Source: Ascidiella aspersa (Eukaryota). From it: a DNA stretch of 64,000 nucleotides. The position numbers and the translations under genes are program-made. The notes below the pieces were generated by a model, which worked only from the letters and a program-made list of their open reading frames with translations, was not told the DNA's origin and made no database searches. This document shows positions 94 through 37,307 of the stretch, piece by piece. The stretch lies in assembly GCA_963924565.1 (NCBI GenBank), contig OZ004608.1, positions 35,898,001 to 35,962,000 on the forward strand, given 5' to 3'. Every line of letters starts with the position of its first letter. The stretch's first letter is position 1.

Positions 94-3000
94 CTTCTTC
101 CACTTTGTAGTTTTGTGAAGGTGCACAATCGTCTGCCGGTGGGCACGTTTTATAGTCCGGTGGTGGTGTTTGGCCTGCCTCATCGGATGCGAGTAATGTT
201 GCGGCTTCGGTAGGTGAATAAATTATTGGAAGTGTATCTTCCTCAGGTGTTTGACATTCGTCTTCATCAAAATGTTTCTCTTCTGTGCTCAACGAAAATA
301 AGTGGTATTTAAAAAAATAAACTACCTATCATGATTAACCTTAGTGGAAAAGTTTAGTAGGGGAAAGTAAGTTTTATGAAATTAATTTGAATTTCGGTTT
401 ATTAGAACTAAGATTTCTACCTGTATGTGAATCAGCTAAATTCATAACTGAACTGTAAACGTCTAATGCATTGACCTACTGAAAAAATGATATCAACCCG
501 TATCACATAAATTCAACGAAGTTATTGTATACGAGCTCAACTGTATCGCTGTAACCAGCTACTGTAATTAATTCAGCAAGGCGACTTAGTTGTAAATGGT
601 GGGCCGTGAAAAGGTTACTATCTGAACAAATGATGTACCTTTTGTGTTCTGTCGCGAAGTTGTATTACTGGAAGGATCTTTGGTCAACAATGGATAAAGT
701 TTCGGTAGTGAGGTTTGGCCCATCTCGATTGTTGGGAGAATATGACGAGAATCATGGTCATATTCAGCTGAGAACTGTGTCCTATCTTCTAATGTGGTGG
801 TTTCAGTAGGTGAAGGAGTTTTTAGCTGGAGTTTATTTTCTTTGGGTATATATGATGTACCTGTTACTTTTGTGTTCTGTCGCGAGGTTTTATTACTGGA
901 TGGATCTTTGGTCGATAATGGACCAAGTTCAATTTTTGATCCTCGTTCTTCATCTTCACATGAAATTCCTCTTTCTGTACGACAAGATTAAACACCAACG
1001 ATAGAGAGTTATCTGATTTTAAGCCCTAATTTCGAATGGGATGAAACAAATTTACTCGACAACACTTACGACACCAAAAAAATATTTTCACAGTAATTGT
1101 AAGACAGGGTTTAGATAATCTAGTAATTGAGTAAACAATAAACATACATGTTTACGGAATATAGTTAATCAATTGTCACACAGTATATTTTAACCAGGTA
1201 AATTAAAAAAATAATCATCAATAAAATCGACATCTAGGTTCATTAAGACTTTTGGTATTCATTGCCATGTACAGTATTAATAGAAAGAAAATAATCTTAC
1301 TTTTTAAACATTTCAATAGATGTTTTCGGACGAAGCACATCACTAGCCCCACTGAAACGATAAGTAGTAAAATGATGGGCAATATAAACCATGGAATTCT
1401 GTGTTCATCTGTTAATAAAACAAAGACGTTTTAATAGAGTGCATTAAATGTTTTAACAATACCTAATACGCTTTATAAAACTTCTATTTATACTGTGAAG
1501 TGATGTAAAAGAGAAAATGTTACCTACCAAATTGGTAAAAAGGCCACCTTTTGGGCTTGGAGTCAATGGCCCCCATGTTTGTCAAAATCAGTTTTATAAA
1601 TGCCAATATTTTGAAGAAAATACAAATTTCTTATGCTTTCAATGCGTCATATGTTTTAATTAAAGTTTTGCCAATTTGAACAAAAAATGCAATTAGTATC
1701 AATTTTGGTATTTTCATTTGGTCTCACTGATGTGAAATCGTTTAATACCGATTTGCTTTTTGTATGATGTCTATTTTATACGTGAGAGGAAACAAGGCAC
1801 AGGACAATTCCCGAAGGGCAGAAAGCTTAAGAACCACTGGTTTACAAACATTTAGCTTCCCTGACAGAAGTTACCTTCTAATATACCGTTATAACTCAAT
1901 TTCTTAGTTGCAATTAGTTTAGACAGATATCGTGTGCCGAACGTGCAATATAACAAAAATGTTCACATCATTTTTATTTTATCCGAATTTTAGTTCCAGG
2001 TCACAAATTAAACCATTGAATTTGAGTGTTTCATAAATAGTTCACTTCATGGCTTAAGTATATCAGAAGATGCTTGGGTCGCAAAATTTGACCATTATTA
2101 AGTCGTGTTAAAAAAGGTTGCGAACCACTGGTCTTTTGGAGCAGGTGTTGGTTTTGGTAAAATTCTGTTCTTTATAGTTTTAACAAACTACTTGGCAAAC
2201 GCGAGCATGTTTGTAGTTTTTAATCCATTTCCTTGATTTAAATTTCAATAATACAGTGTTTTCTCGGTAGTTCACTATATTTAACCGCAAACCCGGAGGT
2301 AAGGATATAGTTGAGACAAAAGTTCTTCCGGGAATTAAACGTATGGCAGGTGGGGCAAGTAGTAAAAAATAAACCCTCGAGTTAAAAAATATTTTTTTAT
2401 GCAAATGACATTGTAATGCATATTGGGTATAGGTTTGGTTTTGTATGGATATATTACACAGAACTTATTAGCTATTTCTCTTTTTCAATTTAAAGACAAT
2501 CAGACTATAAAACGCTTTTTAGTGACACCATTAACATGAGCTCTATTTACAAACCTTGTGTTGCTTCAATTGTGATTTCAAATAATTCGCTGAAGGAACT
2601 TTGACCAAACTCGTTGCCAACTGCAACTTTAACTTGGTACAAAGTTGCATTTTCGATTTTCGAGATCTGTAAAATATGTTTAGTTAGAAAATTAGAGCAG
2701 AGTGAAAAGCAAACAATAATATAACCAAAAAGTGACCAAAGTTTGGTGGATCTATAACAAATATGTATGCTTTTTTAATTTTTAAAGAAAATAACACGAT
2801 TCTTTTGGAAAAGCAGATATCCTTAAAACCAATCTAGTTAGAGGTCAAAATTGTTAAATTGTTACCGCGAAATTGGTGTTACAATATAAATCTAACTAAC
2901 ATTAAAAAGATATTTATCCTAAAAGCGTAAAAAACGGGGGATAAAAAATGGAGCCTAGAAAGAAAAACGAGAAACAATGTGTTGGTGACTTAATAACTTA

Positions 3001-6000
3001 ATAACTATAAACGTCGTTGAATATGCCGGATCTCTAAGCAGTTTATTCTTTAAAATGTCGCATACCTATATACATATTGCGTTCAGACATATTCTTTAGA
3101 TATATTTTGGACATATATTTATTGTTATATATTACTCAAGTTTTTACAGTAATCAAGGATGATGTAGCAGACGAATGGGTTTCGTTCCACTCGGAACAAA
3201 CGTTTCCGTCATCCGCCGTTGCATTGTAGCAAAACCGATACTTGACAATATAAATCACTTTGGATGATCCATAGTATTTGGTCGGGTAGGTCTGAAATTA
3301 AAAAAAAATTACTTGAGATGAAAACAACGCACAAGATGAAAAAAACAGTTGATTTGTTAGGTTAAGCATTGACATCTGCTAACAATCTGTATGTAACCTT
3401 TAAAATACTTACATTCCAAGTCATCAATATATTTCCATCGTTCAACGTTGCATTGACACCAGATGGCGCTAAAGAAGGAGCTACAACAACAACAAAAATA
3501 TTTACAATTCATAGTTGTACAACACTTCCAGATAGTTATAATGCGTGGGCAATTCTTACCTATACATTATGCAACATGAATTAGCTGAACAAATTAATGT
3601 TAGTTTAAATACGTAGTGCTTGTTATGTGAACTAGTCAGGGGTGGACGAGTAACTTTTGTTTCAGATATAGTCACAAACCTTATGACGTAACTATTGGAA
3701 CATACTATCACTTAAGTCGATTATATAAAAGTGCGTAGAAACATGTTTGTGTTCAGTTAAACTTTCTGCGAATTCGACAAAAAAACTTTTATCTACAATT
3801 TTGTGGATTTGCACTTTTCTTACTTATTTTGTTGATCTTAAGAGGCTCCTGCAAATGTTGGTAAGTATAAAGACAGAATAACTGAATAACCCTTACATAA
3901 ATGGAAACAAAGAGAGCAACGGAAAAAATGCTCAGTCCTGCTTAGATTAGCAAAATGTCGCGCTACTCAAGCGGATAAAACTGATAATTAGGGCGATTAT
4001 TTTTTAAACTTGTCAAAAAAAGTTAAAATTTTGTCAAAATTTATGCGTTAGGTCAGAATTTTTTTGTAAATTAGTTAAAGACCAAATAGAATAAAAATTG
4101 ACATATATCGTTTTTAAAAAAAAGTAAGATAAAAGTATAGTCACCTTTTTGAAATAGTCGTTCAGTTAAAAAAAAAATTTAGTTATATTCAACGACATTT
4201 TAACATTATTGGTACACGCGAGCTGCCAGAATTAACCACCCAGTTCTAATTTACCGCATTAGGTTCAGCTTTAACTTCGTTTTTCATCATATAGTTTTTA
4301 TCTCTATAAATGTATTGCTCTTTTTTGGTTGTGATTTGCAATTATCCCATTTCCCATTTCGATAACTAGGTCTTTGTTCACTTTCTGCAATTGTTTTTGC
4401 GTTGTATTTTAACTGTTTACAACACATTTTTCTAAAATAACCAGCGTCTTGTTTTTCTTATGCATTTTTATAGTTGTCTGTATTTTTAAAATGACAAAAA
4501 TATCATCTAAGCATTTTTATGAGTTTTTTTCCGAAAAACATAAATAATTTGCGTTTGACCGGGGTCAGTAAAACAACAAAAACGTGTGATTGACGACGCC
4601 AAAACACTAATGCAGTGCTTCAAAAAAAAATATGCTGTTTAAATCAATGATTTTGTAATGGTTAAAATTTTGTCAACAAAAATATATTTTTAGGTCAAAT
4701 AAGTCAAAATTTCTCATTTTTTAACTCAAAAAATATTCGCCTACTGATAAGTAAACTTACAACCTACCTCCTCCCAATGTCTTTCGTGGTTTGCTTATTT
4801 CACTCGCCTTGCTCATTCCATATTTATTGATGGAATATACTCGGTAAACGTATTCGATGTATGGAAGCAAGTTTGAAGCATAACAAGGCTTGTTGACGTC
4901 ACAATCGAAAGTAAACCAATTATCTTCTTGTTCCAAACGCCCTTCCACCTTATATTGAATGACGTCTGACGATTGGTTGTCCCACGTCAGATGCTGTGAC
5001 GTGGCGCTCGAATTGATGACGTCAACATGAATCGGGAATGTAGGGAGGTCTACATTATAATTTATACGAGTTTAACGAAACCCAAATTTAGAATTTTCTC
5101 GTGGTAACAAATCACAAAACAATAAAACTCTTGATTGTCTGCCTAATGAACGCAGATGTTTAACAACATGTAAGAATAAGGTGTTTAAGTTAAACAGAAC
5201 TTAATAATATATTTCTTCGTCTATAACATTAATATGTTTTTTTTAGATGCCTTATCAGCACTTGTTAAATATTGGAAGAAGCTAACGCACATACACAACG
5301 CCTTACGAACAATGACATATGAAGCGACATATATTTAAACAACGTGTGTGTTTACCAGCTATAGATAGGTGTGTTGTAGCACAGTTCTCATCGAAGTTTG
5401 AGGAAGTACAACATTTGTAAGCACCAGCTTGGTCATCCCCTACTTCTTTTAACTGCAAACCAAAAGTCACATTTTCGTAAGCTTGATTCGCAATGAAAAA
5501 CTATTGTTCTCCTTCTTTGGTATTTTATTTTATTTAATTAAGGAACGCTCCTAGTGGCCGCCTTAGCCTCCAACAGAAACGTGTCTCGGTCCTAATTTCT
5601 GACCTGATTTTGTTCGTGGTAATAGCAACTTCTGTTGGTATGCAAGTTTTGTGAGCACTATTTAGGCCATATAGTTCTTGAATAAGAAACGAAGTTATTG
5701 CAAATTGCAATCATCAATTATGTTTATTAACTTCTAACTGATTTCAGTAGCCAACAACTTAAAATATTATTATAAACGATGTATGTTTTACCTGAAGAGT
5801 ACCATTTACATGATCATAATCTACAACATCAGTTTCAATTCCGCCAACAAAATGAGTCCAACTCCATTTTGTCTCAAGTCGTTCATCGTGTGTTTCGTTG
5901 CATTGTAAAGTTTGATTTTGTCCTCGTAATACTTCAATTTTGTCTTTAACTGCTACACCAACAGTGGGTTCTAAATCAACGTAAAATCAAAAACGATGAA

Positions 6001-9000
6001 ATTTAATCACGACAGATGACTGTGTTACAACATTTCAACTGAAAACTACTCAATTATGTCACTACTGCTTGACAAGAAATGTGACCATCGCATTTCATAT
6101 AGAAAACGTTATTTTACCATAAACCACAAATTGTGTAGATTCAGTAATTGATCCTTTATTGTTTGTTGCCGTACAACTATACGTCCCCTCATCGGATTTA
6201 GAAGTACTTTGAATCAACAATGATCCCTCGGTTAGTGATCCTTTGCTTGATATTCTGTAAAAATAAAAAATAAAAATAAAACCAGCTTTTGCTACATACC
6301 ATATTAGTAGGCTGAATAAAATTTCGTTTATTTAATTCGTAATTAATTAATTTATTTACAATGTCGAACACAAAACAAAACAAAAAAACTGCATCATCAC
6401 AACGTCAGTACAACGATGAATGCAAAAAATCAATATTGAGTATAATAAGGAAAAAAATCTATATATATTTGTTTGATCTAAAATTAAATATATAAAATCT
6501 CTTATACTTACTTAAGATTGCTTGTCATGTTAACGCCATCTTTCATCCAATAAATACGTGGTCTTGGGTATCCTTCAACTGTACAATTCAATATAATGGT
6601 CCTAAAATTGTAAAACAACATCAGTTTAAAACGTTAAGCATAAAACCATCCCGGAGGTTAGTTGTTTAGTCCAGTTAAGCTACTGTAAGTTAATATATTG
6701 GCCTATTTAACAACATTACTCCACTTCGAAAAGACATATTTTTTGGAACTATTTGTCCTCTGTTGCTTTGCTTGCTCGTTGAAATAAAGCACCTAATAAA
6801 GCGTCAATTTTACCTTGAATTCACAAATCGGTGCTGGTCTAGAATCCTACCACAAGAAACATTATTTGGGTTAGGGTGCTGGTTAGCGTTTGGGTTAGGG
6901 TGGGTCAAGTATTATTATTAAATAAAAACATAATAACACTTGACCCACCCACACCCAAATGCTAACCAACACCCCAACTCAAATTTTGTGCGTTGATTTC
7001 ATAGCTGTGGTAGGATTCTAGACCAGCGACCTCAAATAAAATATTAAACCCTTAACTTACTTGTTTTTCAGGGATTCTACTTGATCAAAGCCGGTCGCAA
7101 AACGAGGTGAAAGTTCTATGAAAAAAAAGGAAAACAATTTATGACTTCACCACAAATTAAAAAAGAAATTGGAAAAAATTCAAAGCTCATTTGCCTTTAA
7201 TTCTAAGCTTGGCATTTGAAGTCAAACTTTCAAGTGGATTTTCGGCAACACATTGATATATTGCCACGTCATCTTCAACAACTTCCGTAATCGTCATTAC
7301 ACTTCCGTCTTCTGTTCCCACGCTCGCACTCACACGTGACGTCATCTCAATAGGAGCTTCATTTTTAAGCCACTTATAAGTTGGCTGAGGAATACCTGAA
7401 GCTTTGCAGCGGAATGTCGCAGTTTCGTGAAAATCGACGTTTTGAGAAAATATTCTTCGTTTAAGAAACAGGGGTTCTGAAAGTATTTTGAAATAGCCTT
7501 GAATTTTGAGAAATTGAATTTATACGGATGTACTAAGAGCTTATAGTGACTGGGTCGGGACTTATGCATCTATAACAGATTAGGGCTAAAGTGCCAGCCT
7601 CGCTAGGTTGCCATGTTACGCGGTGATAAATCTTGATTGTTTATTAAATGTTTGGCCTACCTTCATGGCAGTAGTTTATTCAGTGCTCAATGCCCGTGTG
7701 TACTAAATACCAGTAGTGAGCAAATCATTTGCAAAACGAAACAATTTTCTAAGCTTAAATATATAGTTATTCTGCGCGTTGTGTGGCATTTATTGTTGTT
7801 GTAAAGCCAAATTCATTTTCAAACAGCTGATAAGAATACCTGAAACGATTACTTCCCCTTGTGCTGTCATAGAACCCTGTTTATTGCTGGCCGTACATCG
7901 GTAGGTACCAGTGACGTCATGTGTGACGTCATGGATTTCAAGTTGTCCCGCTTCGGTGATGACGTGATTAGAGGGAAGGGATCCGTTTATTTTTGTCCAC
8001 TTGAGGGTTGAAGTTGGACTGAAAAAAGATTTTCGTAAAAGTCGGTATAGTTAAATCTTATGAACTGATCGAACAGAAAAACAAAGTTGAAATCTTAATC
8101 TTTTAATAAAAGAAATTAAGTTTTGCTACTAGTTTATTCTTACTTGTAATATGTTTGAAATAATATTAGGTAGTGCTTGGTTTATAGTTGGGACCAATTT
8201 ACTAATTTAATTATTTTACAATTTTGTGAAGACTAAAAACGAAAATACTGGGGTGATTCTTTGATGTGATTTTAAGTTTAACAAAAAAGCCTACTTACTT
8301 TCCACCAGCGAAGCACTCAAGCATGACTGATGAACCCACTTTAGCATACGTCACATTCTTCGGTTTCAAGAGCATTGTTGGAGGATTAAGTTTGTCTAAG
8401 TTAATAAAAAGACAACAAACATAAACAACAATAAGGTCAATTAGGTTAACTACAACATCCGTACTCACCAGACTTCGATACTTTTAGGTCGATATAATGC
8501 GATGACTTTTCGATTCGACGACCGCTCGGCAAATTCCACTTATCACGAATGAAGCAGAAATATTTATCAGTTAGGTCTGTTGTGGGATTGGCAAAGTAGA
8601 GGGTTCCGTTTTGCGACACGTAATAATCAGCTCTTCCAGGTTTTCCATAGATAATAAAAGCATTAATAGATTCCCAGAAAAAGTACACCGAGTTGTCTGT
8701 AAAATAAACGTGGTTGTAATGTTCACTGGAAATAGGAAACTGCTGAAAACTTCAAAACGGATAAAACGAACATTATTAGTTCATTGAAGTTAAAAACAAC
8801 TGTACTTTATAACATGTAACTTACCAGGAGCAAAGTTGGCTGTTTCACATGAAATAGCAATTCCTTTACCAGCTTCTGTGCTGTATGAAGTTTTACTTAG
8901 AGGTCCAAAATCATTTATAACTGAAAATATATTGGGATATTTTTAATGTTTTTTTGCTGTAGCAGTGGTTTGTAACAAAGAGTTTGAACAAAATTTAAAT

Positions 9001-16379: not shown

Positions 16380-18742
16380 TTCAGCTTGTATGATTAGTAA
16401 AAAACAGATTGCTTTGTTTTTTCTTGGAAACCATACGCCAAAACAATTAGAGGAAAAAATAGGAATTTAGACAATAAAAGAAACAAATAAATGAGTGTTA
16501 ATTTCATGTAAATAGGCGTTAACAGAAACAGATTGTGGGCAATAGTGATAACTTACAATTTAAACGTATCATACAAAAACGTTGAACTGTGATCAATGTT
16601 AATGAAGGAGCCTTTATGGAGGTAATTCTGTTCAGAGTTTCGCTGCGTTTTATCAGACCAAAAATCATTAAATATCCCCAAGGCCGCCTTTAAAGGGCAT
16701 AAACTGACTCTCAAAAAACTGACTCATAAAGGTACGGGTCATTCAACCATATACATGAACTAGCAAGTATTGACAAAAACTAAAGAGATCTAAACCATAC
16801 GGGTGATAACATACTATTTCACAGGAGGGCTGCGTATTACCCTAAGCCTACAAATATTAACACTCTGGGGAAACCAAATATCGCATGATTTGTATACATT
16901 TTGCAAAATATTATATTGATGTATTTGTCAACAAATTAGGCTAAATTGGATTTTCTTCAGATTTTACATCACATCGATTTTGACAATATTTCATGTAATA
17001 ATTATTGAATATTCATGTCAGGAATAGCACTCTTATCAACAAAAAGGTAATTTACAACTTTTGTATCTGAAACCCGTTTAAAACATTTAAGAAATAACTG
17101 TAGTCAATGCTCTTCGAAAGGTTGAAAAAAAAGTTTATAAGTTTATAAAAGATCCTATGATATATTTTTGACTGAGCCCTTTAACCCCACTGCTGCCCCT
17201 TTGCGATTTAGATCTAACGGAACTACAAAGCTACTTCATTTAAATGTTTATGTTTTGGGGATTCAATCGAGGCGATAAAGACTTAACATATGACTCAGTT
17301 CCTGGAATGATTGTTATGGATTGTTTTAAAATAAGTGTGGCCTCGCAAAACAATTTTAGTCCCATGTGATTCATTTACTGGCACTTTTTTTAGGATTTCG
17401 GTTTGTTAATTTCTTGTATTTTATTACAATATAGGCTAAGTAATGTACACAGGCCCTTAGAAAGATTAATTTGTGTATTTTGTTTTAAATGAAAATATGT
17501 GAAATTGAATTCAGTTAGTAATGTGGGATTTTCCGCTTTATGAGAAAATTGTGAATCCCTACAGTGCTTTGACGCGGTACGTAGCGCTATTTCCCATTAT
17601 TTAGCAAATTAAGTAATCAAAGAACTGTCGAGCATCCACCATAATAAATATAAGGGTAGGCCCTTTGCCAATAAACCTTTAAGCAAACTGTTACTTTGCA
17701 TCAATGATGTCTGGTAGTGGCAAATAATGATGGCAATGCGCAAATTCGATTATTGTGTGTTAAGTTCACCTAAAACTGAAAACAACTTAATTTGCAAGGA
17801 ACGTGCAAATTATTTCAAGATTTTGCCACCAAAAAATATTTTATTTGCAGGAAGTTCAAGAAAAGTAGACTTTAATTTGTACCCTTCCCCCAAAAGACGT
17901 CATTACCCTTCTCAACACCGTCCTTCACCACACAATATGGAAAGCCCGAATTAAAAAAAGTCATAAACCTAGACTCGCAACCTACCCCACCCCAACACCT
18001 AATATCGCGTTTTAATATGTCAATTCGATGCCGGTGCCAAATTGAACAGGTCAAACCCAACTCTCCCCGCATTGACCTGTTCGTTAAACTTACTTCCCTC
18101 CTTTGGTACCAACTGACCCCTCCTCTCCTACCAAACTAAATTGTCCTTGCCCCATGTGAAACCAAAACCATAGGTCTGCCCTAACCCCTTCGTAAAATCC
18201 TATGTTTGTTTCTGTTTATTTTTTATTTTTTTTATTATCCCTTTATTGTCTTATCTATCTTGTATTCGTTTTTAAATATTTATTCAAATTAAGGAAAAGT
18301 TACCCTACTGTCATTGCTCGCCTTTTTCCAGCGAGACACCATTTTGTTTTTCGAACCGCCATTTTTTTTTCAGTTTTTACATTGACATTTTGGTTGATAT
18401 GTACAATATATATTAATGCATTTATCTTGCCGTGCCTTCTTCGAGAGCTGCACCAGCCCGAAGAAAATTTTTTTAAATTAAATATGTATATCCTTAGCCG
18501 ATGGGAGCTATGAAAAACATAGAGCAAGTTGTCCAGTAACACAAGTTTGGAAATGAAATTAAGTTTGGACATGAAATTATGCGATTAACAAAAGTTCACT
18601 TGAAGTAAATCTGAGAGTACATTTTGGATTAATGACTCGTAAATTATTTGTTTTGCTTTTCTAGCATACTAATAACGTCATTGCTATCGGATAGGTCGAG
18701 GCAATGCGTTGTATTATAATGTACCGACCCGCCACCCTAAAG

Positions 18743-27000: not shown

Positions 27001-30000
27001 GTTAGGTCAGAATTTTTTTGTAAATTAGTTAAAGACCAAATAGAATAAAAATTGACATATATCGTTTTTAAAAAAAAAGTAAGATAAAAGTATAGTCACC
27101 TTTTTGAAATAGTCGTTCAGTTAAAAAAAAATTTTAGTTATATTCAACGACATTTTAACATTATTGGTACACGCGAGCTGCCAGAATTAACCACCCAGCT
27201 CTAATTTACCGCATTAGGTTCAGCTTTAACTTCGTTTTTCATCATATAGTTTTTATCTCTATAAATGTATTGTTCTTTTTTGGTTGTGATTTGCAATTAT
27301 CCCATTTCCCATTTCGATAACTAGGTCTTTGTTCACTTTCTGCAATTGTTTTTGCGTTGTATTTTAACTGTTTACAACACATTTTTCTAAAATAACCAGC
27401 GTCTTGTTTTTCTTATGCATTTTTATAGTTGTCTGTATTTTTAAAATGACAAAAATATCAACTAAGCATTTTTATGAGTTTTTTTCCGAAAACATAAATA
27501 ATTTGACCGGGGTCAGTAAAACAACAAAAACGTGTGATTGACGACGCCAAAACACTAATGCAGTGCTTCAAAAAAAAATATGCTGTTTAAATCAATGATT
27601 TTGTAATGGGTAAAATTTTGTCAACAAAATATATTTTTAGGTCAAATAGGTCAAAATTTATCATTTTTTAACTCAAAAAATATTCGCCTACTGATAAGTA
27701 AACTTACAACCTACCTCCTCCCAATGTCTTTCGCGGTTTACTTATTTCACTCGCATTGCTGATTCCATATTTATTGATGGAATATACTCGGTAAACGTAT
27801 TCGTTGTATGGAAGCAAGTTTGAAGCATAACAAGGTTTGTTGACGTCACATTTGAAAGTAAACCAATTATCTTCTTTTTCCAAACGCCCTTCCACCTTAT
27901 ATTGAATGACGTCTGACGATTGGTTGTCCCACGTCAGATGCTGTGACGTGGCGCTCGAATTGATGACGTCAACATGAATCGGGAATGTAGGGAGGTCTAC
28001 ATTATAATTTAAACGAGTTTAACGAGACCCAAATGTAGGATTTTCTCGTGGTAACAAATCACAAAACAATAAAACGCTTGATTGTCTGCCTAATTAACGC
28101 AGTATGAATAATAAAGCAACACGCCAAAGACACCTTGATGTTTAAAAACATGTAAGAAAAAGGTGTTTTAAGTACAGAACTTAATAATATATTTCTTCGT
28201 CTATCGCATAAATATTGAGCTTTTAGATGCCTTATCAACACTGTTAAATATTGAAAGAAGCTGACGCACATACACGTCAACGTAAGAAAAAAAATGTCAG
28301 ATGGAGCGACATATATTTAAACAACCTGTGTGTTTACCAGCTATAGATAGATGTATTGTAGCACAGCTTTGATCAATATTCGTAGAACAACAACACGTGT
28401 AAGCACCAGCTTGACCATCCCCTACTTCTTTTAACTGCAAACCAAAAGTCACATTTTCGTAAGCTTGATTCGCAATGAAAAACTATTGTTCTCCTTCTTT
28501 GGTATTTTATTTTATTTAATTAAGGAACGCTCCTAGTGGCCGCCTTAGCCTTCAACAGAAACGTGCCCCGGTCCTAATTTCAGACCTGATTTTGTTCGTG
28601 GTAATAGTTACTTCTGTTGGTATGCAAGTTTTAAGTTTTTATATTTATCTCATTGTGAGCACTATTTAGGCTATAGGTCTATAGTTCTTGAATAAGAAAC
28701 GAAGTTATTGCAAATTGCAATCATCAATTATGTTTATTAACTTCTAACTGATTTCAGTAGCCAACAACTTAAAATATTATTATAAACGATGTATGTTTTA
28801 CCTGAAGAGTACCATTTACATGATCATAATCTACAACATCAGTTTCAATTCCGCCAATAACATGAGTCCAACTCCATTTTGTCTTAAGTCGTTCATCGTG
28901 TGTTTCGTTACATTGTAAAATTTGATTTTGTCCTCGTAATACTTCAACTGTGTCATTCATTGGTACAGCAACAGTGGGTTCTAAATAAACGTAAAATCAA
29001 AAACGATGTAATTTTAATCACGACAGACGAGTGTGTTAGAACATTTAAACTAAAAACTACTCAATTATGTCACTGCTGCTTGACAAGAAATGTGATCATC
29101 GCATTTCATATAGAAAACGTTATTTTACCATAAACCACAAGTTGTGTAGATTCAGTAATTGTTCCTTTATTGTTTGTTGCCGTACAACTATACGTCCCCT
29201 CATCGGATTTAGAAGTACTTTGAATCAACAATGATCCCTCGGTTAGTGATCCTTTGTTTGAGATTCTGTAAAAATCAAAATATTACCAGCTTTTGCTAAA
29301 TACCATATTAGTAGGCTGAATAAAATTTCGTTCATTTGATTCGTAAGTAATTAATTTATTTACAATGTCGAACACAAAACAAATCAAAAAAACTGCATCA
29401 TCACTAATGTTGGTACAACGATGAATGCAAAAAATCAATATTGAGTATAATAAGGAAAAAATCTATATATTTGTTTGATCTAAAATTAAATATATAAAAA
29501 CTCTTATACTTACTTAAGATTGCTTGTCATGTTAACGCCATCTTTCATCCAATAAATACGTGGTCTTGGGTATCCTTCAACTGTACAATTCAATATAATG
29601 GTCCTAAAATTGTAAAACAACACCAGTTTAAAACGTAGCATAAAACCATCCCGGAGGTTAGTTGTTTAGTCCAGTTAAGCAACTTTAAGTTAATATATTG
29701 GCCTATTTAACAACATTACTCCACTTCGAAAAGACATATTTTTTGCAACTATTTGTCCTCTGTTGCTTTGCTTGCTCGTTGAAATAAAGCACCTAATAAA
29801 GCGTCAATTTTACCTTGAATTCACAAATCGGTGCTGGTCTAGAATCCTACCACAAGAAACATTATTTGGGTTAGGGTGCTGGTTAGCGTTTGGGTTAGGG
29901 TGGGTCAAGTATTATTATTAAATAAAAACATAATAACACTTGACCCACCCACACCCAAATGCTAACCAACACCCCAACTCAAATTTTGTGCGTTGATTTC

Positions 30001-33000
30001 ATAGCTGTGGTAGGATTCTAGACCAGCGCCCTAAAATAAAATATTAAACCCTTAACTTACTTGTTTTTCAGGGATTCTACTTGATCAAAGCCGGTCGCAA
30101 AACGAGGTGAAAGTTCTATGAAAAAAAGGAAAACAATTTATGACTTCACCACAAATTAAAAAAGAAATTGGAAAAAATTCAAAGCTCATTTGCCTTTAAT
30201 TCTAAGCTTGGCATTTGAAGTCAAACTTTCAAGTGGATTTTCGGCAACACATTGATATATTGCCACGTCATCTTCAACAACTTCCGTAATCGTCATTACA
30301 CTTCCGTCTTCTGTTCCCACGCTCGCACTCACACGTGACGTCATCTCAATAGGAGCTTCATTTTTAAGCCACTTATAAGTTGGCTGAGGAATACCTGAAG
30401 CTTTGCAGCGGAATGTCGCAGTTTCGTGAAAATCGACGTTTTGAGAAAATATTCTTCGTTTAAGAAACAGGGGTTCTGAAAGTATTTTGAAATAGCCTTG
30501 AATCTTGGGAAATTGAATTTATACGGATGTACTAAGAGCTTATAGTGAATGGGTTATAGTGAACTTATAGTGACTGGGACTTATGCATCTAGAACAGATT
30601 AGGGCTAAACTGCCAGCCTCGCTAGGTTGCCATGTTACGTGGTGATAAATGTTGATTGTTGATTAAATGTTTGGCCTACCTTCATGGCAGTAGTTTATTC
30701 AGTGCTCAATGCCCATGTGTACTAAATACCAGTAGTGAGCAAATCATTTGCAAAACGAAACAATTTTCTAAACTTAAATATAGTTATTCTTCGCGTTACG
30801 CGGCATTTACTGTTGTTGTAAATTCCACTGTATAATTCCACTGCCCCTTGTGTTGTTATAGAACCCTGTTCATTACTGGCTGTGCATCGGTAGGTACCAG
30901 TGACGTCATGTATGACGTCAGGGAGTTCAAGTTGTCCTGCATCAGTGATCACGTGATTAGAGGGAAGGGATCCGTTGATTTTTGTCCACTTGAGGGTTGG
31001 ATTTGGACTGAAAAAAGATTTTCGTAAAAGTCGGTATAGTTAAATCTTATGAATTGATCGAACAGAAAAACAAAGTTGAAATCTTAATCTTTTAATAAAA
31101 GCGAAACCCATAATTTAAGTTTTGCTACTAGTTTATTCTTACTTGTAATATGTTTGAAATAATATTAGGTAGTGCTTGGTTTATAGTTGGGACCAATTTA
31201 CTAATTTAATTATTTTACAATTTTGTGAAGACTAAAAACGCAAATACTGGGGTGATTCTTTGATGTGATTTTAAGTTTAACAAGAAAGCCTGCTTACTTT
31301 CCACCAGCGAAGCACTCAAGCATGACTGATGAACCCACTTTAGCATACGTCACATTCTTCGGTTTCAAGAGCATTGTTGGAGGATTAAGTTTGTCTAAGT
31401 TAATAAAAAGACAACAAACATAAACAACAATAAGGTCAATTAGGTTAACTACAACATCCGTACTCACCAGACTTCGTTACTTTTAGGTCGATATAATGCG
31501 ATGACTTTTCGATTCGACGACCACTCGGCAAATTCCACTTATCACGAATGAAGCAGAAATATTTATCAGTTAGGTCTGTTGTGGGATTTGCAAAGTAGAG
31601 GGTTCCGTTTTGCGACACGTAATAATCAGCTCTTCCAGGTTTTCCATTGATAATAAAAGCATTAATAGATTCCCAGAAAAAGTACACCGAGTTGTCTGTA
31701 AAATAAACGTGGTTGTAATGTTCACTGGAAATAGGAAACTGCTGAAAACTTCAAAACGGATAAAACGAACATTATTAGTTCATTGAAGTTAAAAACAACT
31801 GTACTTTATAACATGTAACTTACCAGGAGCAAAGTTGGCTGTTTCACATGAAATAGCAATTCCTTTACCAACTTCTACGCTGTATGAAGTTTTACTTCGA
31901 GGTCCAAAATCATTTACAACTGAAAATATATTGGGATATTTTTAATGTTTTTTTCTGTAGCAGTGGTTTGCAACAAAGAGTTTGAATAAAATTTAAATTA
32001 CTTCAAAAACAAGATTCATTCCTCAATTACGCGTACATTTATATAAATGTATATCTTTTTTACCTGTAACGGGTTTGTTCACACTTCCCTCGCTTCTAAC
32101 CGAAAGCTTTAAAGTTGAAATATTTTAACTTTCCGCAACCGAAAGCGTTTTTTACGCTCTATGTACCGACGTTTATCGCATAACACGTCTAGTGCTAACT
32201 AACCTTAACGTTAAAAATTAAATATTAACAGACAACTTTTTTAAGTTTTGCCTTAGTAAAATTAAGTGTTTAAATATTATGGCCAAGGCTGTCTACCGCA
32301 GCATATTCCCAAACAATATGAAAAGCTACTCCTGGCTGATCGTATATGTAGGAGAAATGCAAATCAGTTTTTTTGTACCCGTATCTTTTGGTAGCAGCTT
32401 TGTTCTGTACTTACAAGTGATTTCAAGTTTTGCAGAGTTGCTCAAAGCTGTTCCTTCATCACTCGTTGCCAGGCACTGGTAATTTCCCCCATCTGATACT
32501 CGTAGTGAATTTATCGTCAGTGAACCATTCTTGCTGTTCTTGTACCTCTCTGTATTTGTTAAACAGAGCGTTATCAAAAGCACATAATATAGAAAAACAT
32601 TTTTTTACAGTAAATCATCATATGAAAACACACAGGATGTCTTCAGGGAGGCTTACAGAAACCAGTCATTCTGATCAGTATTGTAGTACAAGAAAGGCCA
32701 GTCTAGAAAAACAACTATTCTGCGGTGAGGATCAAACTCACGACCTCTGTCACACCTGACTCTACGAAAGCATATTTTTTATTCTATAATGTTTGCCGTT
32801 AGAGTTGGCCAGTACAACCCCAGAAGAGCTTGGTCACATAATACACATTGTGTATATGCATGGTTCAGTTGCTAAAAACAACAAATAAATATTAAGCATA
32901 TTTTGATTAAAGAGTTACATCCCAGGAAAATGTAATTACTTTGTCCGTCATACATCAAGAATCATGACAAAACTTCAACACGTAGTCAAGCCCATACAAA

Positions 33001-36000
33001 AGTAGATATCATTTTGAACGTTTCGAATAACTCTTTGGTAATTTATCACATCAGTTCTGTATAGGCTTTGATATTCTTACTACGTCTTACTGAAACCTTC
33101 AACATTTATGCTCCAAAAACTTAACAGTAATAAAAACATTTAATATTTCCATTTGGTCATACCTGGGTTGTTTGCTAAAATATCAAGACTAAACGGTTTT
33201 GCAATTGATGATGAACACAGCGGACTCTTAAAAAACGAAAAGTCCAACAGAGTTTAAAATTACAATTAAAAGCCGATGGTGCAAATATGCTGAACCCAAC
33301 TGTCGTGACGCGTTGTCAAATCTGTAAAATGTTGCTAATAAAGAAGTAGTGACTTTTAAGACTCACCATTTGTAATTATTTTGTGACCATCTTTCATCCA
33401 AGTGGTACTTTGTTTTAATAAGTTTGTTTCACATTGAAATGTTACTTGCTTCGTTCCATCAAAGAGTCTAACATATTGATCACTTGGTTCCCGTAAAAAT
33501 ACATTATCTTAGGAAAGAAATCTGTTTTATAATACGTCTTATATTTTATAACTGCTCTATTTTACAAGTACAAACTAGCAATTTAGTTTCACCTTTTAGA
33601 CTTAGTTTTGCATTTGAATACAATTGCCCAACAATATTTTCAGCCACACATTGATATATTGCCACGTCATCGTCACCAACTTCCGCAATCGTCATCACAC
33701 TTCCTTCTTCGGTTCCCACGCTCACATTCACACGTGACGCCATCTCAATAGGAGATCCATTTTTTAACCATCTATAGTTTACTGCAGATAAACTTGTAGC
33801 CTTACATTGAAACGTTGCTGTTTCACCGTGTTGGACAATTTGCGAGGAGATGTTTGTGACCCAAGTTGGTTTGTCTAAAAACAAACTAGTGTGAATGGCA
33901 AACAAGTTTTTAATGATAAATTGTAAATATGTACAAATCACCAGGTGGTATTCGAAGTCTAAACAAAATCAGGTAGTCGACAAGAAAATGTTTGCAAACA
34001 AGATTTGACTTGCATAGCTTGGTTGGTAGACCAACTATACTGAAACGTTTAGGAAGTTCGAATTATACTGCGGGCTAACGTTTAGGTGACCGATGTCTTT
34101 CGGAGCCTATAGTAAATGACTACCCGGAGTTCTAACGACAGAAATATCTTATCGTTGGTTAACGCCAATTTTAAACATGTTGATCGCGACCCACACGTTG
34201 GGTATGTTGGTTTGGGTCAGTGGTTCCTAACATTTTCATCCCATGGACCTCCTTACGGTGTTTAAACGCCCCCCCCCCTCCTAAAAAACAGAAACAGTAA
34301 ATTTGACAATACGAACGAAGTAGGCTATAAGTCCTTTTAACATTGTAGGCTTTTTGGCCGTTATCCAAGGTATTAGTAATCTACACTGATTGATATTTTG
34401 ATAAAAACAATATATGCAGTGGTAGTAAATACAAAAAGTCCCGCGCATTGTGACGTAATAAATATAAACTGTTCACTCCAGTCAAAATTTTGACTCGTTT
34501 GCGAAAAATACATTTACTGTTTATACTTTGAAGGGGGCTCTGCTCAGAACCTGCGTCAATATGCATGCGCGGTTTCACCCCCAACTAAAACGTGCTTGTT
34601 TTGGTTAAATTTAAAATTCCCACATAGAATTTTGAAAGTCTCTCTGTGGGGTAAATTCACCCCGGTTGAGAACCTCTCGTTTAGGGTATACTTGTCTAAT
34701 TACAATGAATTGAGCGTATAAAATATGTGACTACAATTAAGCGTATGAAATCGGGCTGACCAGGTTTGTCACCAAACATATTCTAACTGTTATAATCACC
34801 TGTTATCTCCAGTCTACCACTTGATGTCACCCTATCCAGATTGTTTTTAGCCTCACACTCGTAAACTCCAGCCATATCCCCTGTGACGTTATGCAGCTCA
34901 AGTTGTCTCGCGCGCGTGATCACGTGACTTGAGGGAAGGTGACCATTAACCTTTCTCCAAACGATGTTCGGCGTGGGGCTGAAAAGTTAAATACAACACT
35001 GTAGGGAATAATGTTTGGTGTTTGTGCAAAACATTTTCAAAACCATGAGCTAATTTTGGCAGTATTTGACATTTTATGCTTCACAACATTATTTAATTAA
35101 TTTTTATCACTCGTACAAGCTACACTTACTTTCCACTGGCAAAACATTCCAAAGTTATGGTTTCACCAACAAAAACATAGGTGGTTGGTTTTGGTTGCAA
35201 CATCATTACTGGCCCATGATGTTGTTCTAAGAAACAGAAAAGCTGTATGAGATACATATTTCTTTAATAAGAATTACAACACATCATATTTTATTTACTT
35301 TTTCCAGTAACTGAAAGATCAATACGAGGTGAGTTGTACTCCCTATAAATATCAAAGTATGGCTCCTTCCCAGTAATGTAGCAAGTATAACTGTTCGAGT
35401 CAGCAATTGTTGGGTTGGAGAGATAAAGAGTTCCATCAGTTTGCGACACGTAGTACTCGGGTGTGCCCGGTGAACCAAGTTGGTTGTAGTTTTCTTTCTT
35501 CTCCCAAAGGTAATGGACCGAGTTTTCTAAATCAAAGTACGACTTAGTGATTTCAAGGATCTTTACGGTATGCTATAAAAATAATAGATTTGCTCTTACC
35601 TGGCGAAAAGTTAGCTCCATCGCACGTTAGATTCACACCAATACCTTGCTTAGTCGTAACACGTGAGCGAGTTTTGCCTTTAAAAGGTCTAAAGTCTAAA
35701 CAGAGAAAATCGACACAAAAGAAAACAACATAAAGCTGGGCAAAGATGCATGATTGCTTGATTTTCCACTAGGCGACGCGTTAAGCACATTTTTACCAGT
35801 AATTTAAAAATGTGCCTTTGTAAACTATCACTTATCGGTATATTTTTTACATATAATATAATAACAGCTGTTGAAAACGCTAGCTTTGAAAAAAGCACAA
35901 AAACTTTGAATAGCTCGTAAAACGGTACAATTGGTTTGATTTTTTTATAAGCAAATTAAATCACTCACATTTTGTCTCGAGAAATGCCACATTGCTTAGC

Positions 36001-37307
36001 GCTGTTCCTTCATTATTGGAGGCCAAACATTGATATTTTCCTTCGTCAGAAGCGTTGACTCTTGAAATTATCAAGCTGCCATGTTGATCCACCATCAACC
36101 TGCTATGTTCTATAATACAAAAACAATTTATACAAAAATCTTCCGTTAGATTTAAAAACACATGTACAATATGAATGAGGATGCTTTGAAGGACCTTTTA
36201 ACACAAACTAACAACTAAGATTGTAAACAGAAATTAGATCACTTGTTACCTCCAGCTAATATAACTTCTCCATCCTTCTTCCAGTGATATTTAGCATTGG
36301 TCAAGTTTGCCTTACAGCTTAATGTGACGTCATCGACCACAGCCACCTCCAAGTCAACAACAGTGATGTGCTTTGGCTCCAGAATGAAGATGTTGGCTGA
36401 AACTATAATAAATACATTAAATGTTTTTGTAGCTATGGCATTACAATATTGGGAAAGAAGCAAGTAGTTATGGAGTCAACTGTGTTCCGCCTCATATACT
36501 CTAAATGACCTTCTTAACCGTATAACCTTGTCCACGTGACGACAAATTTAAACCGCAAGTTATGACGTCATTGTGTGCAACATTATTTTAAGTCAAAGTC
36601 GATTAAAAATGCACACAAATCGTTTACAAAATACAAAAAAAAATCTATAGTCAGCTTATGGAAAATTGTCATTCAATTGAAATTTTATCAAAAAAATATA
36701 GTTTAGAGTTGTATTCCATGACATTTTAATTGTATTTTGTCTTCGTTGGAGCAATAAACGGTATTCACCAGCTTGAAGAATTAGCCAACTGTTTACACAA
36801 AATTCTTCGAAAATACCCAGCGTCTTGTTTGTTTGTCTATTTCAAATAACAAAAAACAACAACTATAAGCATTATTATGGGCTTTGCATAAATTAGAAAA
36901 AATAACTAAAACGTGTGGTTGACGACGCGAAGACACTAATGCAGTACTTTAAACAACAATATGTTGTTCAAATCAATGTTTTTCTAAAAGGTTAAATTTT
37001 TGTCAAAAAAATATATTTTTAGGTAAAAATTTTTTTCAAGTCAAAATTTCTCATTTTTAAGGTAAAAAAATAATCGTCCTATTATATCATACTACTTCGT
37101 AAAAGCTTTTAGCACAAATTTTAGTAAAATTGTTTTTGGTCAAATAATGGTATTATGTTGCGGATGTTTAATAAATTTATATTGTTTCTATTTGTTTAAA
37201 CTGACTAGTTATTCCTAAAAAAATAAAAAAGCAGGCAATTATTTATAACATTCCAGTAAATAGATGATAATACCTGATGCAAAAGTGAGAAGAAATACAA
37301 GAAACAT
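21558..37307 (-). CDS. Copy B: complete paralog (or allele) of the 10xIg-FN3-TM contactin-like receptor, ~1581 aa; second FN3 partly deleted
   Basis: Exons: 37274-37307, 36250-36402, 35969-36109, 35600-35695, 35299-35526, 35130-35226, 34800-34978, 33593-33874, 33367-33507, 32415-32549, 31824-31919, 31468-31695, 31298-31394, 30811-31007 (inferred new donor), 30194-30475 (GC donor), 30061-30115, 29514-29603, 29129-29265, 28802-28980, 28338-28434, 27715-27996, 26336-26466 (inferred new acceptor), 25743-25854, 24484-24594 (TM), 23767-24081, 23252-23443, 22254-22499, 21558-21970 (stop TAG). The sum is 4746 nt, divisible by 3. It could instead be a young pseudogene if the new splice sites are not used. 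Confidence 0.82.
22827..23209. mobile_element. hAT-type MITE with dispersed AAGTC subterminal repeats
   Basis: Ends CAGTGT.../...ACACTG. TSD CGACAAGG/CGATAAGG (7/8). Many AAGTCA motifs. The tail of the copy-A equivalent is at 1-34. Confidence 0.7.
24484..24594 (-). CDS. Copy B transmembrane exon (VPWFIWPIVIVLLLVSLGLVMCFV-RKRK)
   Basis: 111 nt, phase 1-1. Indels relative to copy A are in-frame. A second in-phase donor C|GTAAGT lies at ~24504. Confidence 0.85.
25743..30115 (-). CDS. Copy B Ig9, Ig10, FN3-1 and truncated FN3-2
   Basis: Near-identical to copy A 2555-7115. A ~260 bp deletion at ~26467 removes the 68-nt exon and the start of the next exon. Confidence 0.8.
26943..27690. mobile_element. 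Same hAT-type element in copy B (predates the duplication)
   Basis: Same termini and TSD CTGATAAT/CTGATAAG as 3989-4743. Confidence 0.75.
29830..30030. mobile_element. Palindromic MITE-like element, copy B equivalent of 6830-7030
   Basis: Essentially identical sequence and inverted repeats. Confidence 0.75.
30194..33507 (-). CDS. Copy B Ig5-Ig8 block
   Basis: Same exon series as copy A 7195-10492, except that the original donor of the Ig7 C-terminal exon is deleted and an in-phase GTAAAT lies 18 nt further on. Confidence 0.82.
33593..36402 (-). CDS. Copy B Ig1-Ig4 block
   Basis: Same seven exon sizes and phases as copy A 10579-15291; open frames. Confidence 0.85.

What the first reader, a model, noticed from the sequence alone, without database searches (positions are those of the whole stretch)
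94..37307. Tandem cluster of 'double-horseshoe' contactin-like receptors with a signalling tail: candidate self/non-self or immune recognition system
Seen: both genes splice into SP-10Ig-2FN3-TM-~390 aa tail, with contactin-type ectodomain motifs. Established: contactins are 6Ig-4FN3 and GPI-anchored; L1/neuroglian proteins are 6Ig-~5FN3 with a short FIGQY tail; Dscam has 10 Ig but 6 FN3 and a different order. This architecture fits none of them. Inference: a neural adhesion scaffold has been rebuilt into a lineage-specific, tandemly amplified, diversifying receptor with inhibitory/ubiquitin-ligase motifs. This parallels hemolin (an immune horseshoe related to neuroglian) and Ig-FN3-TM allorecognition gene clusters.
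Basis: partly seen in the sequence, partly recalled or inferred. Interest (0 to 1): 0.88.

Follow-up and report, generated by a model that had tools for sequence, protein, structure and literature searches.

The report
Clustered contactin-like receptors with duplicated horseshoes
The window holds two neighbouring members of a family of at least 24 tandemly repeated genes for contactin-like cell-surface receptors, in what is probably a sea-squirt genome; the four-domain binding module occurs one, two or three times per gene, and no immune or self-recognition role has been shown.

Summary
On the minus strand lie two ~23-kb tandem duplicons. Gene A resolves into 29 exons with consistent phases: signal peptide, 10 Ig, 2 FN3, one TM helix and a ~400-aa tail (about 1591 aa). 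Its last two tail exons lie left of the window. Gene B is collinear, but a 255-bp deletion has removed the first exon of FN3-2.

The Ig1-4 and Ig5-8 blocks are two copies of one 7-exon cassette. Their exons match contactin Ig1-4 best among solved structures.

The pair belongs to a cluster of at least 24 loci over 1.35 Mb, in two inverted arms. Cassette number varies: two (10 Ig) in at least six loci, apparently three in one, one (6 Ig) in most. Both 6-Ig types examined carry deletion scars of a 10-Ig ancestor.

Paralogues are mosaics, consistent with gene conversion. Pairwise dN/dS is 0.2-0.7, so diversifying selection is not shown. The tail conserves a PPxY and an acidic dileucine-like motif. 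The ITIM-like motif is in B only.

Best reading: a contactin-derived adhesion/recognition receptor family regulated by endocytosis. An allorecognition or immune role remains speculative. No RNA evidence and no cross-species comparison could be obtained.

The parts
16346..16379 (-). Gene A exon 1: ATG and signal peptide (MFLVFLLSFAS, phase-1 donor)
   Evidence: 97% conserved in B, c09, c17, c19
14858..15285 (-). Gene A Ig1 (exons 15285-15139 and 14998-14858)
   Evidence: Pfam Ig_2/I-set; contactin-2 is the top PDB hit for Ig1b, E 7e-26; phases
14180..14575 (-). Gene A Ig2 (exons 14575-14480 and 14407-14180), with the YYVSQ..G.LY motif
   Evidence: Pfam ig; aligns to contactin-2 Ig2 residues 136-182
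13705..14106 (-). Gene A Ig3 (exons 14106-14010 and 13883-13705)
   Evidence: Pfam I-set; contactin-1 and -2 Ig3 are the top PDB hits, E 5e-19
10579..10860 (-). Gene A Ig4 (single 282-nt exon); end of cassette 1
   Evidence: Pfam I-set, E 6e-15; contactin-5 Ig4 (296-380), E 6e-24
9397..10492 (-). Gene A Ig5 (exons 10492-10352 and 9531-9397); start of cassette 2
   Evidence: exon sizes 141/135 against 147/141 in cassette 1
8469..8920 (-). Gene A Ig6 (exons 8920-8825 and 8696-8469)
   Evidence: exon sizes 96/228 identical to Ig2; no PDB hit on its own
7840..8395 (-). Gene A Ig7 (exons 8395-8299 and 8018-7840)
   Evidence: Pfam I-set/Ig_3; exon sizes 97/179 identical to Ig3
7195..7476 (-). Gene A Ig8 (single 282-nt exon, GC donor); end of cassette 2
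   Evidence: Pfam I-set, E 2.5e-16; contactin-5 Ig4, E 8e-31
6118..7115 (-). Gene A Ig9 (three exons: 7115-7061, 6601-6512, 6254-6118)
   Evidence: small A-strand exon found through cross-copy conservation; Pfam I-set
5356..5970 (-). Gene A Ig10 (exons 5970-5792 and 5452-5356)
   Evidence: only weak Pfam Ig_3/I-set hits; two cysteines in the usual positions
4768..5049 (-). Gene A FN3-1 (single exon)
   Evidence: Pfam fn3, E 2.5e-8; generic FN3 hits in PDB
2555..3480 (-). Gene A FN3-2 (three exons: 3480 or 3468 to 3413, 3291-3148, 2666-2555)
   Evidence: phases; only motif-level and weak Pfam support; the acceptor at 3468 is not conserved in other copies, so 3480 is the likelier one
1301..1408 (-). 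Gene A transmembrane exon (IPWFILPIILLLIVSVGLVMCFV, then RKHLLK)
639..974 (-). Gene A tail exon T1 (alternative in-phase donor at 861)
   Evidence: no Pfam hit
88..282 (-). Gene A tail exon T2 (PPPDY motif). T3 and T4 lie left of the window, at about -694..-939 and -1230..-1606
37274..37307 (-). Gene B exon 1: ATG and signal peptide
33593..36396 (-). Gene B cassette 1, Ig1-Ig4 (exons 36396-36250, 36109-35969, 35695-35600, 35526-35299, 35226-35130, 34978-34800, 33874-33593)
   Evidence: projection with intact splice sites and frames
30194..33507 (-). Gene B cassette 2, Ig5-Ig8 (exons 33507-33367, 32549-32415, 31919-31824, 31695-31468, 31394-31298, 31007-30811 with a relocated donor, 30475-30194)
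28338..30115 (-). Gene B Ig9 and Ig10 (exons 30115-30061, 29603-29514, 29265-29129, 28980-28802, 28434-28338)
27715..27996 (-). Gene B FN3-1
25743..26514 (-). Gene B remnant of FN3-2. The FN2a exon is deleted; a possible in-frame exon is 26514-26336, followed by 25854-25743
24484..24594 (-). Gene B transmembrane exon
21596..24081 (-). Gene B tail exons: T1 24081-23767, T2 23443-23246 (GC at the donor; a stop follows 4 codons later if unspliced), T3 22499-22254, T4 21970-21596 (ends at the stop)

Best explanation
The region holds two adjacent members of a large tandem family of type I membrane glycoproteins derived from the contactin/L1 branch of the immunoglobulin superfamily.

Shown here:
- Each gene encodes a signal peptide, one or more copies of a 7-exon cassette encoding four Ig domains of the contactin Ig1-4 type (two copies in A and B), two further Ig domains, two FN3 domains and one TM helix.
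- The tail is about 400 aa, acidic and Ser/Thr/Pro-rich. It is built from phase-1 exon modules whose number varies between paralogues.
- The family has at least 24 loci in 1.35 Mb, in two inverted arms.
- The paralogue comparisons point to three processes: tandem duplication, unequal recombination that adds or removes whole cassettes, and sequence exchange between paralogues (mosaic divergence, read here as gene conversion). Constraint is moderately relaxed (dN/dS 0.2-0.7).

Inferred:
- The proteins act as cell-surface adhesion or recognition receptors. They would bind in trans or in cis through the folded-back Ig1-4 modules, as contactins, L1 and Dscam do. The two cassettes in tandem would give two binding heads on one stalk.
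- The conserved PPxY and acidic dileucine-like motifs in the tail suggest control of surface level by Nedd4-type ubiquitin ligases and adaptor-mediated endocytosis. They do not suggest ITIM/ITAM signalling.

Unknown: which cells express the genes and what the ligand is.
For: Architecture and exon model.

Cassette duplication: exon sizes are 147/141/96/228/97/179/282 against 141/135/96/228/97/179/282, with the same phases.

Contactin as closest solved family, exon by exon and at equivalent domain positions for Ig2b, Ig3b, Ig4 and Ig8.

Cluster size and cassette counts.

Ectodomain exons are intact, with conserved splice sites, in 12 fetched paralogues.

Purifying but relaxed selection and mosaic divergence: A and B show no differences across the Ig7a exon, Ig8 and the first two Ig9 exons, but dS is about 0.2 in Ig2, Ig3 and Ig10. 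A and c09 differ by a single substitution in Ig1.

Deletion scars: a hybrid Ig4/Ig8 exon in c09 and c17 (c19 is identical to c17 in this exon), and a dead Ig1b remnant in c05 and c15 (mapped), also present in c06, c07 and c18.

TM helix and modular tail.

PPxY in T2 and [DE]xxxL[LI] in T3 are present in every copy where those exons were readable; there is no FIGQY, NPxY or ITAM.
Against: No transcript evidence. Exon joining, the use of T3 and T4 after the weak T2 donor, and expression itself are unproven.

The horseshoe fold of either cassette is inferred from per-exon similarity only. The spliced protein was not folded.

The Ig6b exon has no detectable PDB match.

Some copies are damaged: the B FN3-2 deletion, a shared nonsense codon in c17 and c19, and a fragment with two TGA at 35.825 Mb.

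The tail motifs are short and could be conserved simply because the duplications are recent.

Tail exons evolve at dN/dS of about 1 or more.
Confidence: 0.6

Rival explanations
1. Self/non-self determinant. The cluster would be an allorecognition, histocompatibility or gamete self-incompatibility locus. Paralogue and allele diversity in the membrane-distal Ig modules would serve as the recognition code.
For: A large tandem cluster of type I IgSF receptors with variable domain number, mosaic sequence exchange and pseudogenes. This resembles in outline the Hydractinia allorecognition complex of 41 clustered Alr genes (PMC9546547). Other agents' notes say the genome is an ascidian, a group that has colony allorecognition and self-sterility.
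Against: No domain shows dN/dS above 1 with adequate counts. ITIM is not conserved and there is no ITAM. There are no polymorphism, expression or linkage data. Whether the species is colonial is unknown. No homology to known ascidian fusibility genes was shown or sought.
Confidence: 0.15
2. Neuronal or epithelial surface identity code. The paralogues would be expressed in different combinations per cell and mediate isoform-specific homophilic adhesion or self-avoidance. This is analogous to clustered protocadherins or Dscam1, here achieved by gene number instead of alternative splicing.
For: The closest relatives, contactins, are neuronal wiring molecules that bind homophilically through Ig1-4 (PMC10084454). 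The family has many similar paralogues in one cluster. dN/dS below 1 fits maintained binding function.
Against: No expression data. No shared constant exons or promoter-choice structure was seen; each gene has its own full exon set. Intergenic regions were not analysed for regulatory structure.
Confidence: 0.15
3. Largely non-functional segmental-duplication array. A recently amplified block of a contactin-like gene would now be mostly decaying, with the apparent architecture being a relic.
For: The B FN3-2 deletion. The shared stop codon in c17 and c19. The fragment with stop codons at 35.825 Mb. The weak or GC donor after T2. Tail dN/dS of about 1. Repeat-rich surroundings.
Against: In 12 copies nearly all of the roughly 24 ectodomain exons keep frame, length, cysteines and splice sites. 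dN/dS is well below 1 in most Ig and FN3 domains at dS of 0.1-0.3. Family members diverged to 50-65% identity still show open exons.
Confidence: 0.1

Closest known systems
Contactins (CNTN1-6, Drosophila Cont, C. elegans RIG-6)
   Same: N-terminal four-Ig module. Contactins are the best solved-structure match for the Ig1b, Ig2b, Ig3b, Ig4 and Ig8 exons. The match falls on the equivalent contactin domain for Ig2b, Ig3b, Ig4 and Ig8; for Ig1b it falls on Ig1 in the Ig1-4 structures but best on Ig5 in the longer chains. Ig domains precede FN3 domains, and most Ig domains are split over two exons.
   Different: Contactins have 6 Ig + 4 FN3 and a GPI anchor, and most invertebrates have one gene (PMC10084454). 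Here there are 6, 10 or about 14 Ig, only 2 FN3, a TM helix, a ~400-aa tail, and at least 24 clustered genes.
L1 family (L1CAM, neurofascin, NrCAM, CHL1, neuroglian)
   Same: Type I membrane IgCAM with a horseshoe-type Ig1-4 module. Neurofascin appears among the PDB hits, at lower rank.
   Different: L1 proteins have 6 Ig + 4-5 FN3 and a short conserved tail with the FIGQY ankyrin-binding motif (own knowledge). No FIGQY-like motif is present here. The tail is long, modular and unrelated. Tunicates are reported to have a single L1 (PMC10084454).
Dscam
   Same: Ten Ig domains in total, an N-terminal horseshoe, and recognition diversity as a theme.
   Different: In Dscam the tenth Ig lies between FN3-4 and FN3-5, and there are six FN3 (own knowledge). 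Insect diversity arises by mutually exclusive splicing within one gene. Here the ten Ig are contiguous and include a duplicated Ig1-4 cassette, there are two FN3, and diversity comes from gene copies.
Hydractinia allorecognition complex (Alr family)
   Same: Dozens of type I IgSF receptor genes and pseudogenes in one genomic interval, with variable domain architecture (PMC9546547).
   Different: [quoted passage not shown] Alr1 and Alr2 control allorecognition in Hydractinia and are highly polymorphic (PMC9546547). Here the domains are canonical contactin-like I-set domains, there is no conserved ITIM or ITAM, and no functional evidence exists.

Membership tests
Contactin | N-terminal Ig1-4 module with contactin-type sequence at each domain position | tested here: met
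   Per-exon phmmer against PDB. Ig1b: contactin-2, E 7e-26. Ig2b: contactin-2 Ig2. Ig3b: contactin-1 and -2 Ig3, E 5e-19. Ig4: contactin-5 Ig4, E 6e-24. Ig8: contactin-5 Ig4, E 8e-31. The Ig6b exon gave no hit.
Contactin | Six Ig domains | tested here: not met
   A and B have 10 Ig. The 6-Ig paralogues examined derive from a 10-Ig form by deletion.
Contactin | Four FN3 domains | tested here: not met
   Only two FN3 units lie between Ig10 and the TM exon.
Contactin | GPI anchor, no cytoplasmic domain | tested here: not met
   A 23-residue hydrophobic helix followed by RKHLLK and four tail exons.
L1CAM family | 6 Ig + 4-5 FN3 ectodomain | tested here: not met
   10 Ig + 2 FN3.
L1CAM family | Conserved short cytoplasmic tail with FIGQY ankyrin-binding motif | tested here: not met
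   A regular-expression scan of the TM and T1-T4 exon peptides of seven copies found no F[IV]G[QA]Y.
Dscam | Order 9 Ig - 4 FN3 - Ig10 - 2 FN3 | tested here: not met
   The ten Ig are contiguous, followed by 2 FN3.
Dscam | Arrays of mutually exclusive alternative exons for half-Ig domains (arthropod Dscam1) | tested here: not met
   In the chained exon projection each exon query was placed once per cassette in each gene.
Hemolin | Secreted protein of four Ig domains only | tested here: not met
   Hemolin is a low-ranked PDB hit. The genes here have more Ig domains, FN3 domains, a TM helix and a tail.
ITIM-bearing inhibitory receptors | Conserved (S/I/V/L)xYxx(I/V/L) motif in the tail | tested here: not met
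   Present only in B (SAYDII). A has SAYDIT, and c08 and c05 lack the Tyr.
Allorecognition determinants (functional class) | Extreme allelic polymorphism and genetic linkage to fusion/rejection or self-sterility | not testable with these tools
   No population or phenotype data.
Allorecognition determinants (functional class) | Positive selection on the recognition domains | tested here: inconclusive
   Pairwise Nei-Gojobori dN/dS per domain is 0.2-0.7. Site-level tests were not run and would be confounded by the evident sequence exchange between paralogues.

The most novel reading that the evidence does not exclude
The 1.35-Mb cluster is this ascidian's self-recognition system: either a histocompatibility or self-sterility locus, or a cell-identity code. 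In this reading a contactin-derived receptor has been multiplied to more than 20 genes. Recognition diversity would come from shuffling whole Ig1-4 horseshoe cassettes (1, 2 or 3 per gene) and from gene conversion between paralogues. That way of diversifying an adhesion receptor is, as far as I know, not described for any IgCAM.
Probability: 0.15. Interest if true: 0.9.

Novelty: new variant of a known kind. Interest (0 to 1): 0.62.

Why it matters
Contactins are usually single-copy outside vertebrates, GPI-anchored, and fixed at 6 Ig + 4 FN3 (PMC10084454). Here the same binding scaffold has been converted into a transmembrane receptor with a long modular tail. It has been amplified to at least 24 clustered genes, and the whole four-domain binding module varies in copy number.

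If the genes are expressed, this is a natural experiment in how horseshoe Ig modules work in tandem. It is also a concrete candidate locus for cell or individual recognition in the closest invertebrate relatives of vertebrates. If they are not expressed, it is a clear example of cassette gain and loss by unequal recombination in a young gene family.

Tried and rejected
- The search of protein representatives with the Ig4 exon. The list was swamped by giant multi-Ig proteins (hemicentin/titin-like). Local BLAST of all exon peptides against the 150 hits found only generic Ig matches and no orthologue. P0039 and P0139, taken as possible contactins, are not.
- An NCBIfam scan of nine such hits was a wrong choice of library and gave nothing useful.
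- The search for homologous proteins with the FN3-1 frame: no candidate. The length window excludes full-length proteins.
- The search for related loci in metagenome contigs: no relative.
- ESM Atlas with tail exon T4: no usable hit.
I did not try further, and read laying could not be used.
Their structure is known only from exon-hit coordinates.
- Literature searches for an ascidian contactin-like cluster found nothing relevant. Hits for 'contactin' plus Botryllus were the word 'contacting'.
- The species could not be named; a search of genome notes found none with a matching genome size.
- Pfam, Rfam and tRNA scans of window 38000-64000 found nothing.
- The spliced (joined) protein was not built for any search or fold. 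All searches were made exon by exon, by reference.


Full report
**What is in the window.** The window is AT-rich (about 35% GC) and has no gaps. A self-comparison shows that window 1-21292 and 23176-45208 are tandem duplicons, 88-95% identical. On the minus strand of both there is a long series of short open frames with immunoglobulin and fibronectin-III signatures. The strongest are I-set, E 6e-15, for 10577-10897; I-set, E 2.5e-16, for 7190-7519; and fn3, E 2.5e-8, for 4760-5071. The window is G000:C2:35898001-35962000 in a 308.6-Mb assembly.

**Gene model.** I derived exon borders for copy A from splice consensus, phase continuity, the internal duplication and conservation in paralogues. 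The result is 29 exons with consistent phases throughout. All introns are GT-AG except a GC donor after Ig8.
- The order is a signal-peptide exon (MFLVFLLSFAS, then Ala completed by the next exon), ten Ig domains, two FN3 domains, a TM exon (IPWFILPIILLLIVSVGLVMCFV followed by RKHLLK) and four tail exons, T1-T4.
- The sum is 4776 nt, or 1591 aa. Four more residues are added if the conserved FN2a acceptor at 3480 is used.
- Every Ig domain carries its two cysteines, and the ectodomain exons hold 21 N-glycosylation sequons.
- A small 55-nt exon (7115-7061) encodes the first strand of Ig9. I found it only because paralogues conserve that stretch.
- A's exons T3 and T4 lie 0.7-1.6 kb left of the window. 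I read them from the flanking genome.
- B's equivalents are inside the window, at 22499-22254 and 21970-21596.
- The finding's end coordinate, 37307, is B's ATG.

Everything was searched exon by exon, by reference.

**The 'double horseshoe'.** The seven exons of Ig1-Ig4 measure 147/141/96/228/97/179/282 nt. Those of Ig5-Ig8 measure 141/135/96/228/97/179/282 nt, with identical phases. So Ig5-8 is a duplicate of the Ig1-4 cassette.

Against all solved structures, contactins are the best match for each of the following exons:
- Ig1b: contactin-2, E 7e-26.
- Ig2b: contactin-2 residues 136-182, which is Ig2.
- Ig3b: contactin-1 residues 251-306 and contactin-2 residues 244-297, which is Ig3, E 5e-19.
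- Ig4: contactin-5 residues 296-380, which is Ig4, E 6e-24.
- Ig8: contactin-5 Ig4, E 8e-31.

Neurofascin, Robo, DCC, Dscam and hemolin rank lower. The Ig6b exon alone finds nothing, and FN3-1 matches only generic FN3 domains. The horseshoe fold itself is therefore an inference from position-specific similarity, not a tested structure.

**Copy B.**
- B is collinear with A and keeps frames and splice sites in 27 exons.
- A 255-bp deletion (A 3273-3527) removed the FN2a exon and the acceptor of FN2b.
- An AG at 26516/26515 would keep the frame. It would replace the first strands of FN3-2 with sequence that is intronic in A. Whether it is used is unknown.
- B's Ig7b donor is lost and replaced by an in-phase GT at 30810. 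Paralogue c08 shares this change, so it is not a private lesion.
- At the T2 donor B has GC. If that intron is not spliced, the frame stops four codons later.

**The pair is part of a much larger cluster.** The FN3-1 exon has 21 matches on C2 between 35.37 and 36.72 Mb. They are on the minus strand up to 35.93 Mb and on the plus strand from 36.27 Mb. One further match lies on C5. Searches with the Ig4, Ig5a, Ig6b and Ig7b exons add further loci at 35.826, 36.00 and 36.03 Mb. They also show that the locus whose FN3-1 exon lies at 36.275 Mb begins at about 36.246 Mb. That makes at least 24 loci.

Cassette number per locus:
- Two cassettes (10 Ig): A, B, c08 (35.80 Mb), c20 (36.66 Mb), the locus at 36.246-36.275 Mb and the one at 35.997-36.008 Mb. 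The last has no FN3-1 match, so it may be incomplete.
- Three cassettes: c21 (36.7045-36.7126 Mb). It has Ig2b-, Ig3b- and Ig4-type exons three times each in interleaved order, so probably 14 Ig.
- One cassette (6 Ig): most of the others.

A more distant Ig/FN3 gene lies between the two arms, at 36.186-36.194 Mb. Another first-reader note calls it a contactin.

**Direction of change.** I fetched 12 close paralogues and projected A's exons on them.
- In c09 and c17 the 'Ig4' exon matches A's Ig4 for about the first 240 nt. Its last 40 nt and the downstream intron match A's Ig8. c19 is identical to c17 in this exon. This is the signature of unequal homologous recombination that deleted Ig5-8.
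- In c05, c06, c07, c15 and c18, Ig1a is followed by a dead remnant of the first ~97 nt of Ig1b. In c05 and c15, where I mapped it, the sequence then jumps into the Ig5a-Ig5b intron. This is a ~4.8-kb deletion that splices Ig1a to Ig5b.
- Both kinds of 6-Ig gene therefore descend from 10-Ig genes. Within this part of the family the double cassette is the older state.

**Selection and exchange.** Pairwise Nei-Gojobori estimates per domain are mostly 0.2-0.7. No Ig domain is above 1 with adequate counts.

Divergence is strikingly uneven along the gene, at synonymous sites too:
- A and B show no differences across the Ig7a exon, Ig8 and the first two Ig9 exons. They have dS of about 0.2 in Ig2, Ig3 and Ig10.
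- A and c09 differ by a single substitution in Ig1 but have dS of 0.15-0.4 elsewhere.
- B and c08 are almost identical from Ig5 to FN3-2 but not in Ig1-4.

This is mosaic ancestry, most simply explained by gene conversion or recombination. It is not evidence of diversifying selection. Some copies are damaged: c17 and c19 are near-identical and share a stop codon in Ig10a, and a fragment at 35.825 Mb has two TGA.

**The tail.**
- No Pfam family matches it.
- It is acidic and Ser/Thr/Pro-rich: 66 acidic against 38 basic residues, and 123 S+T+P of 380.
- It is built from related phase-1 exon modules whose number varies. c15 has at least four T2-type exons and c05 has an expanded T1.
- PPxY in T2 and an acidic dileucine-like ELVPLL in T3 are present in every copy in which those exons could be read.
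- The ITIM consensus is met only in B (SAYDII). There is no ITAM, NPxY or FIGQY.
- Tail exons evolve at dN/dS of about 1 or more.

**Organism.** Notes by other agents call the genome an ascidian. My only independent check was a glycoside-hydrolase-6-like match at C5:19613851, just over Pfam's threshold. It fits the tunicate cellulose synthase. I treat 'ascidian' as probable.

**Interpretation.** The best-supported reading is a contactin-derived family of transmembrane adhesion or recognition receptors. Surface abundance is probably controlled through WW-domain ubiquitin ligases and endocytic adaptors.

The claims of diversifying selection and inhibitory signalling are not supported. An immune or allorecognition role is untested. 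It remains a live but minority possibility, alongside a neuronal identity code and partial pseudogenisation.

According to a review, contactins are 6 Ig + 4 FN3 GPI-anchored proteins, single-copy in most invertebrates, and tunicates have one L1 (PMC10084454). Against that background, a cluster of more than 20 genes with 1-3 horseshoe cassettes, a TM helix and a modular tail is a new variant of a known kind. I found no paper that describes it.

**Limits.**
- No cross-species comparison: the protein searches cannot reach full-length eukaryotic proteins from single exons.
- No structure of the spliced protein.
- The more distant paralogues are known only from exon-hit coordinates.

Noticed in passing
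G000:C2:36704529-36712881 (+), outside the window: Paralogue c21 has Ig2b-, Ig3b- and Ig4-type exon matches three times each in interleaved order, upstream of its FN3-1 exon at 36720284. It probably has three Ig1-4 cassettes (14 Ig).
   Followed up: partly
G000:C2:36186183-36194444 (-), outside the window: A more distant Ig/FN3 gene lies between the two inverted arms of the cluster (Ig3b-type 45%, Ig4-type 32%, FN3 44% identity). Another first-reader note calls it a contactin with a hammerhead ribozyme in an intron. It may be the parent gene of the family.
   Followed up: no
L026-L027 (C2:36448897-36468896) and L030-L031 (C2:36583965-36603964): Paralogues c17 and c19 are nearly identical, with no ectodomain differences except in FN3-2, and share a stop codon in the Ig10a exon. 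This looks like a recent segmental duplication, 135 kb apart, of an already broken 6-Ig copy.
   Followed up: partly
window 7193-7194 and 30192-30193 (-): The donor after the Ig8 exon is GC (AAG|GCAAAT) in A, B, c08, c05 and c06, but GT in c07, c15 and c18. It is a likely functional GC-AG intron of about 80 nt.
   Followed up: partly
L025 (C2:36376469-36386468), copy c15: At least four tandem T2-type tail exons, each with a PPxY motif and each open frame ending GSGRET-stop. In c05 the T1 frame is expanded to 205 aa. Tail module number varies between paralogues.
   Followed up: partly
window 6830-7027: A ~200-bp stretch in the Ig9a-Ig9b intron matches itself in reverse orientation (about 74%). 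It is present in A, B, c05, c06 and c08 and is probably a small inverted-repeat transposon.
   Followed up: no
window 38000-64000: Repeat-rich DNA with many 84-95% identical dispersed copies (for example 47333-48592 and 62762-64000). There is no Pfam, Rfam or tRNA hit and no sign of a further gene.
   Followed up: partly
G000:C2:35825382-35827086 (-): An isolated cassette-1 fragment (Ig2b-, Ig3b- and Ig4-type matches, the last with two TGA) lies between c08 and c09. It is a pseudogene piece.
   Followed up: no
G000:C5:19613851-19614090 (+): A glycoside-hydrolase-6-like match of 28 bits, just over Pfam's cut-off. It is consistent with the tunicate cellulose synthase and hence with the ascidian origin stated in other notes.
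   Followed up: no
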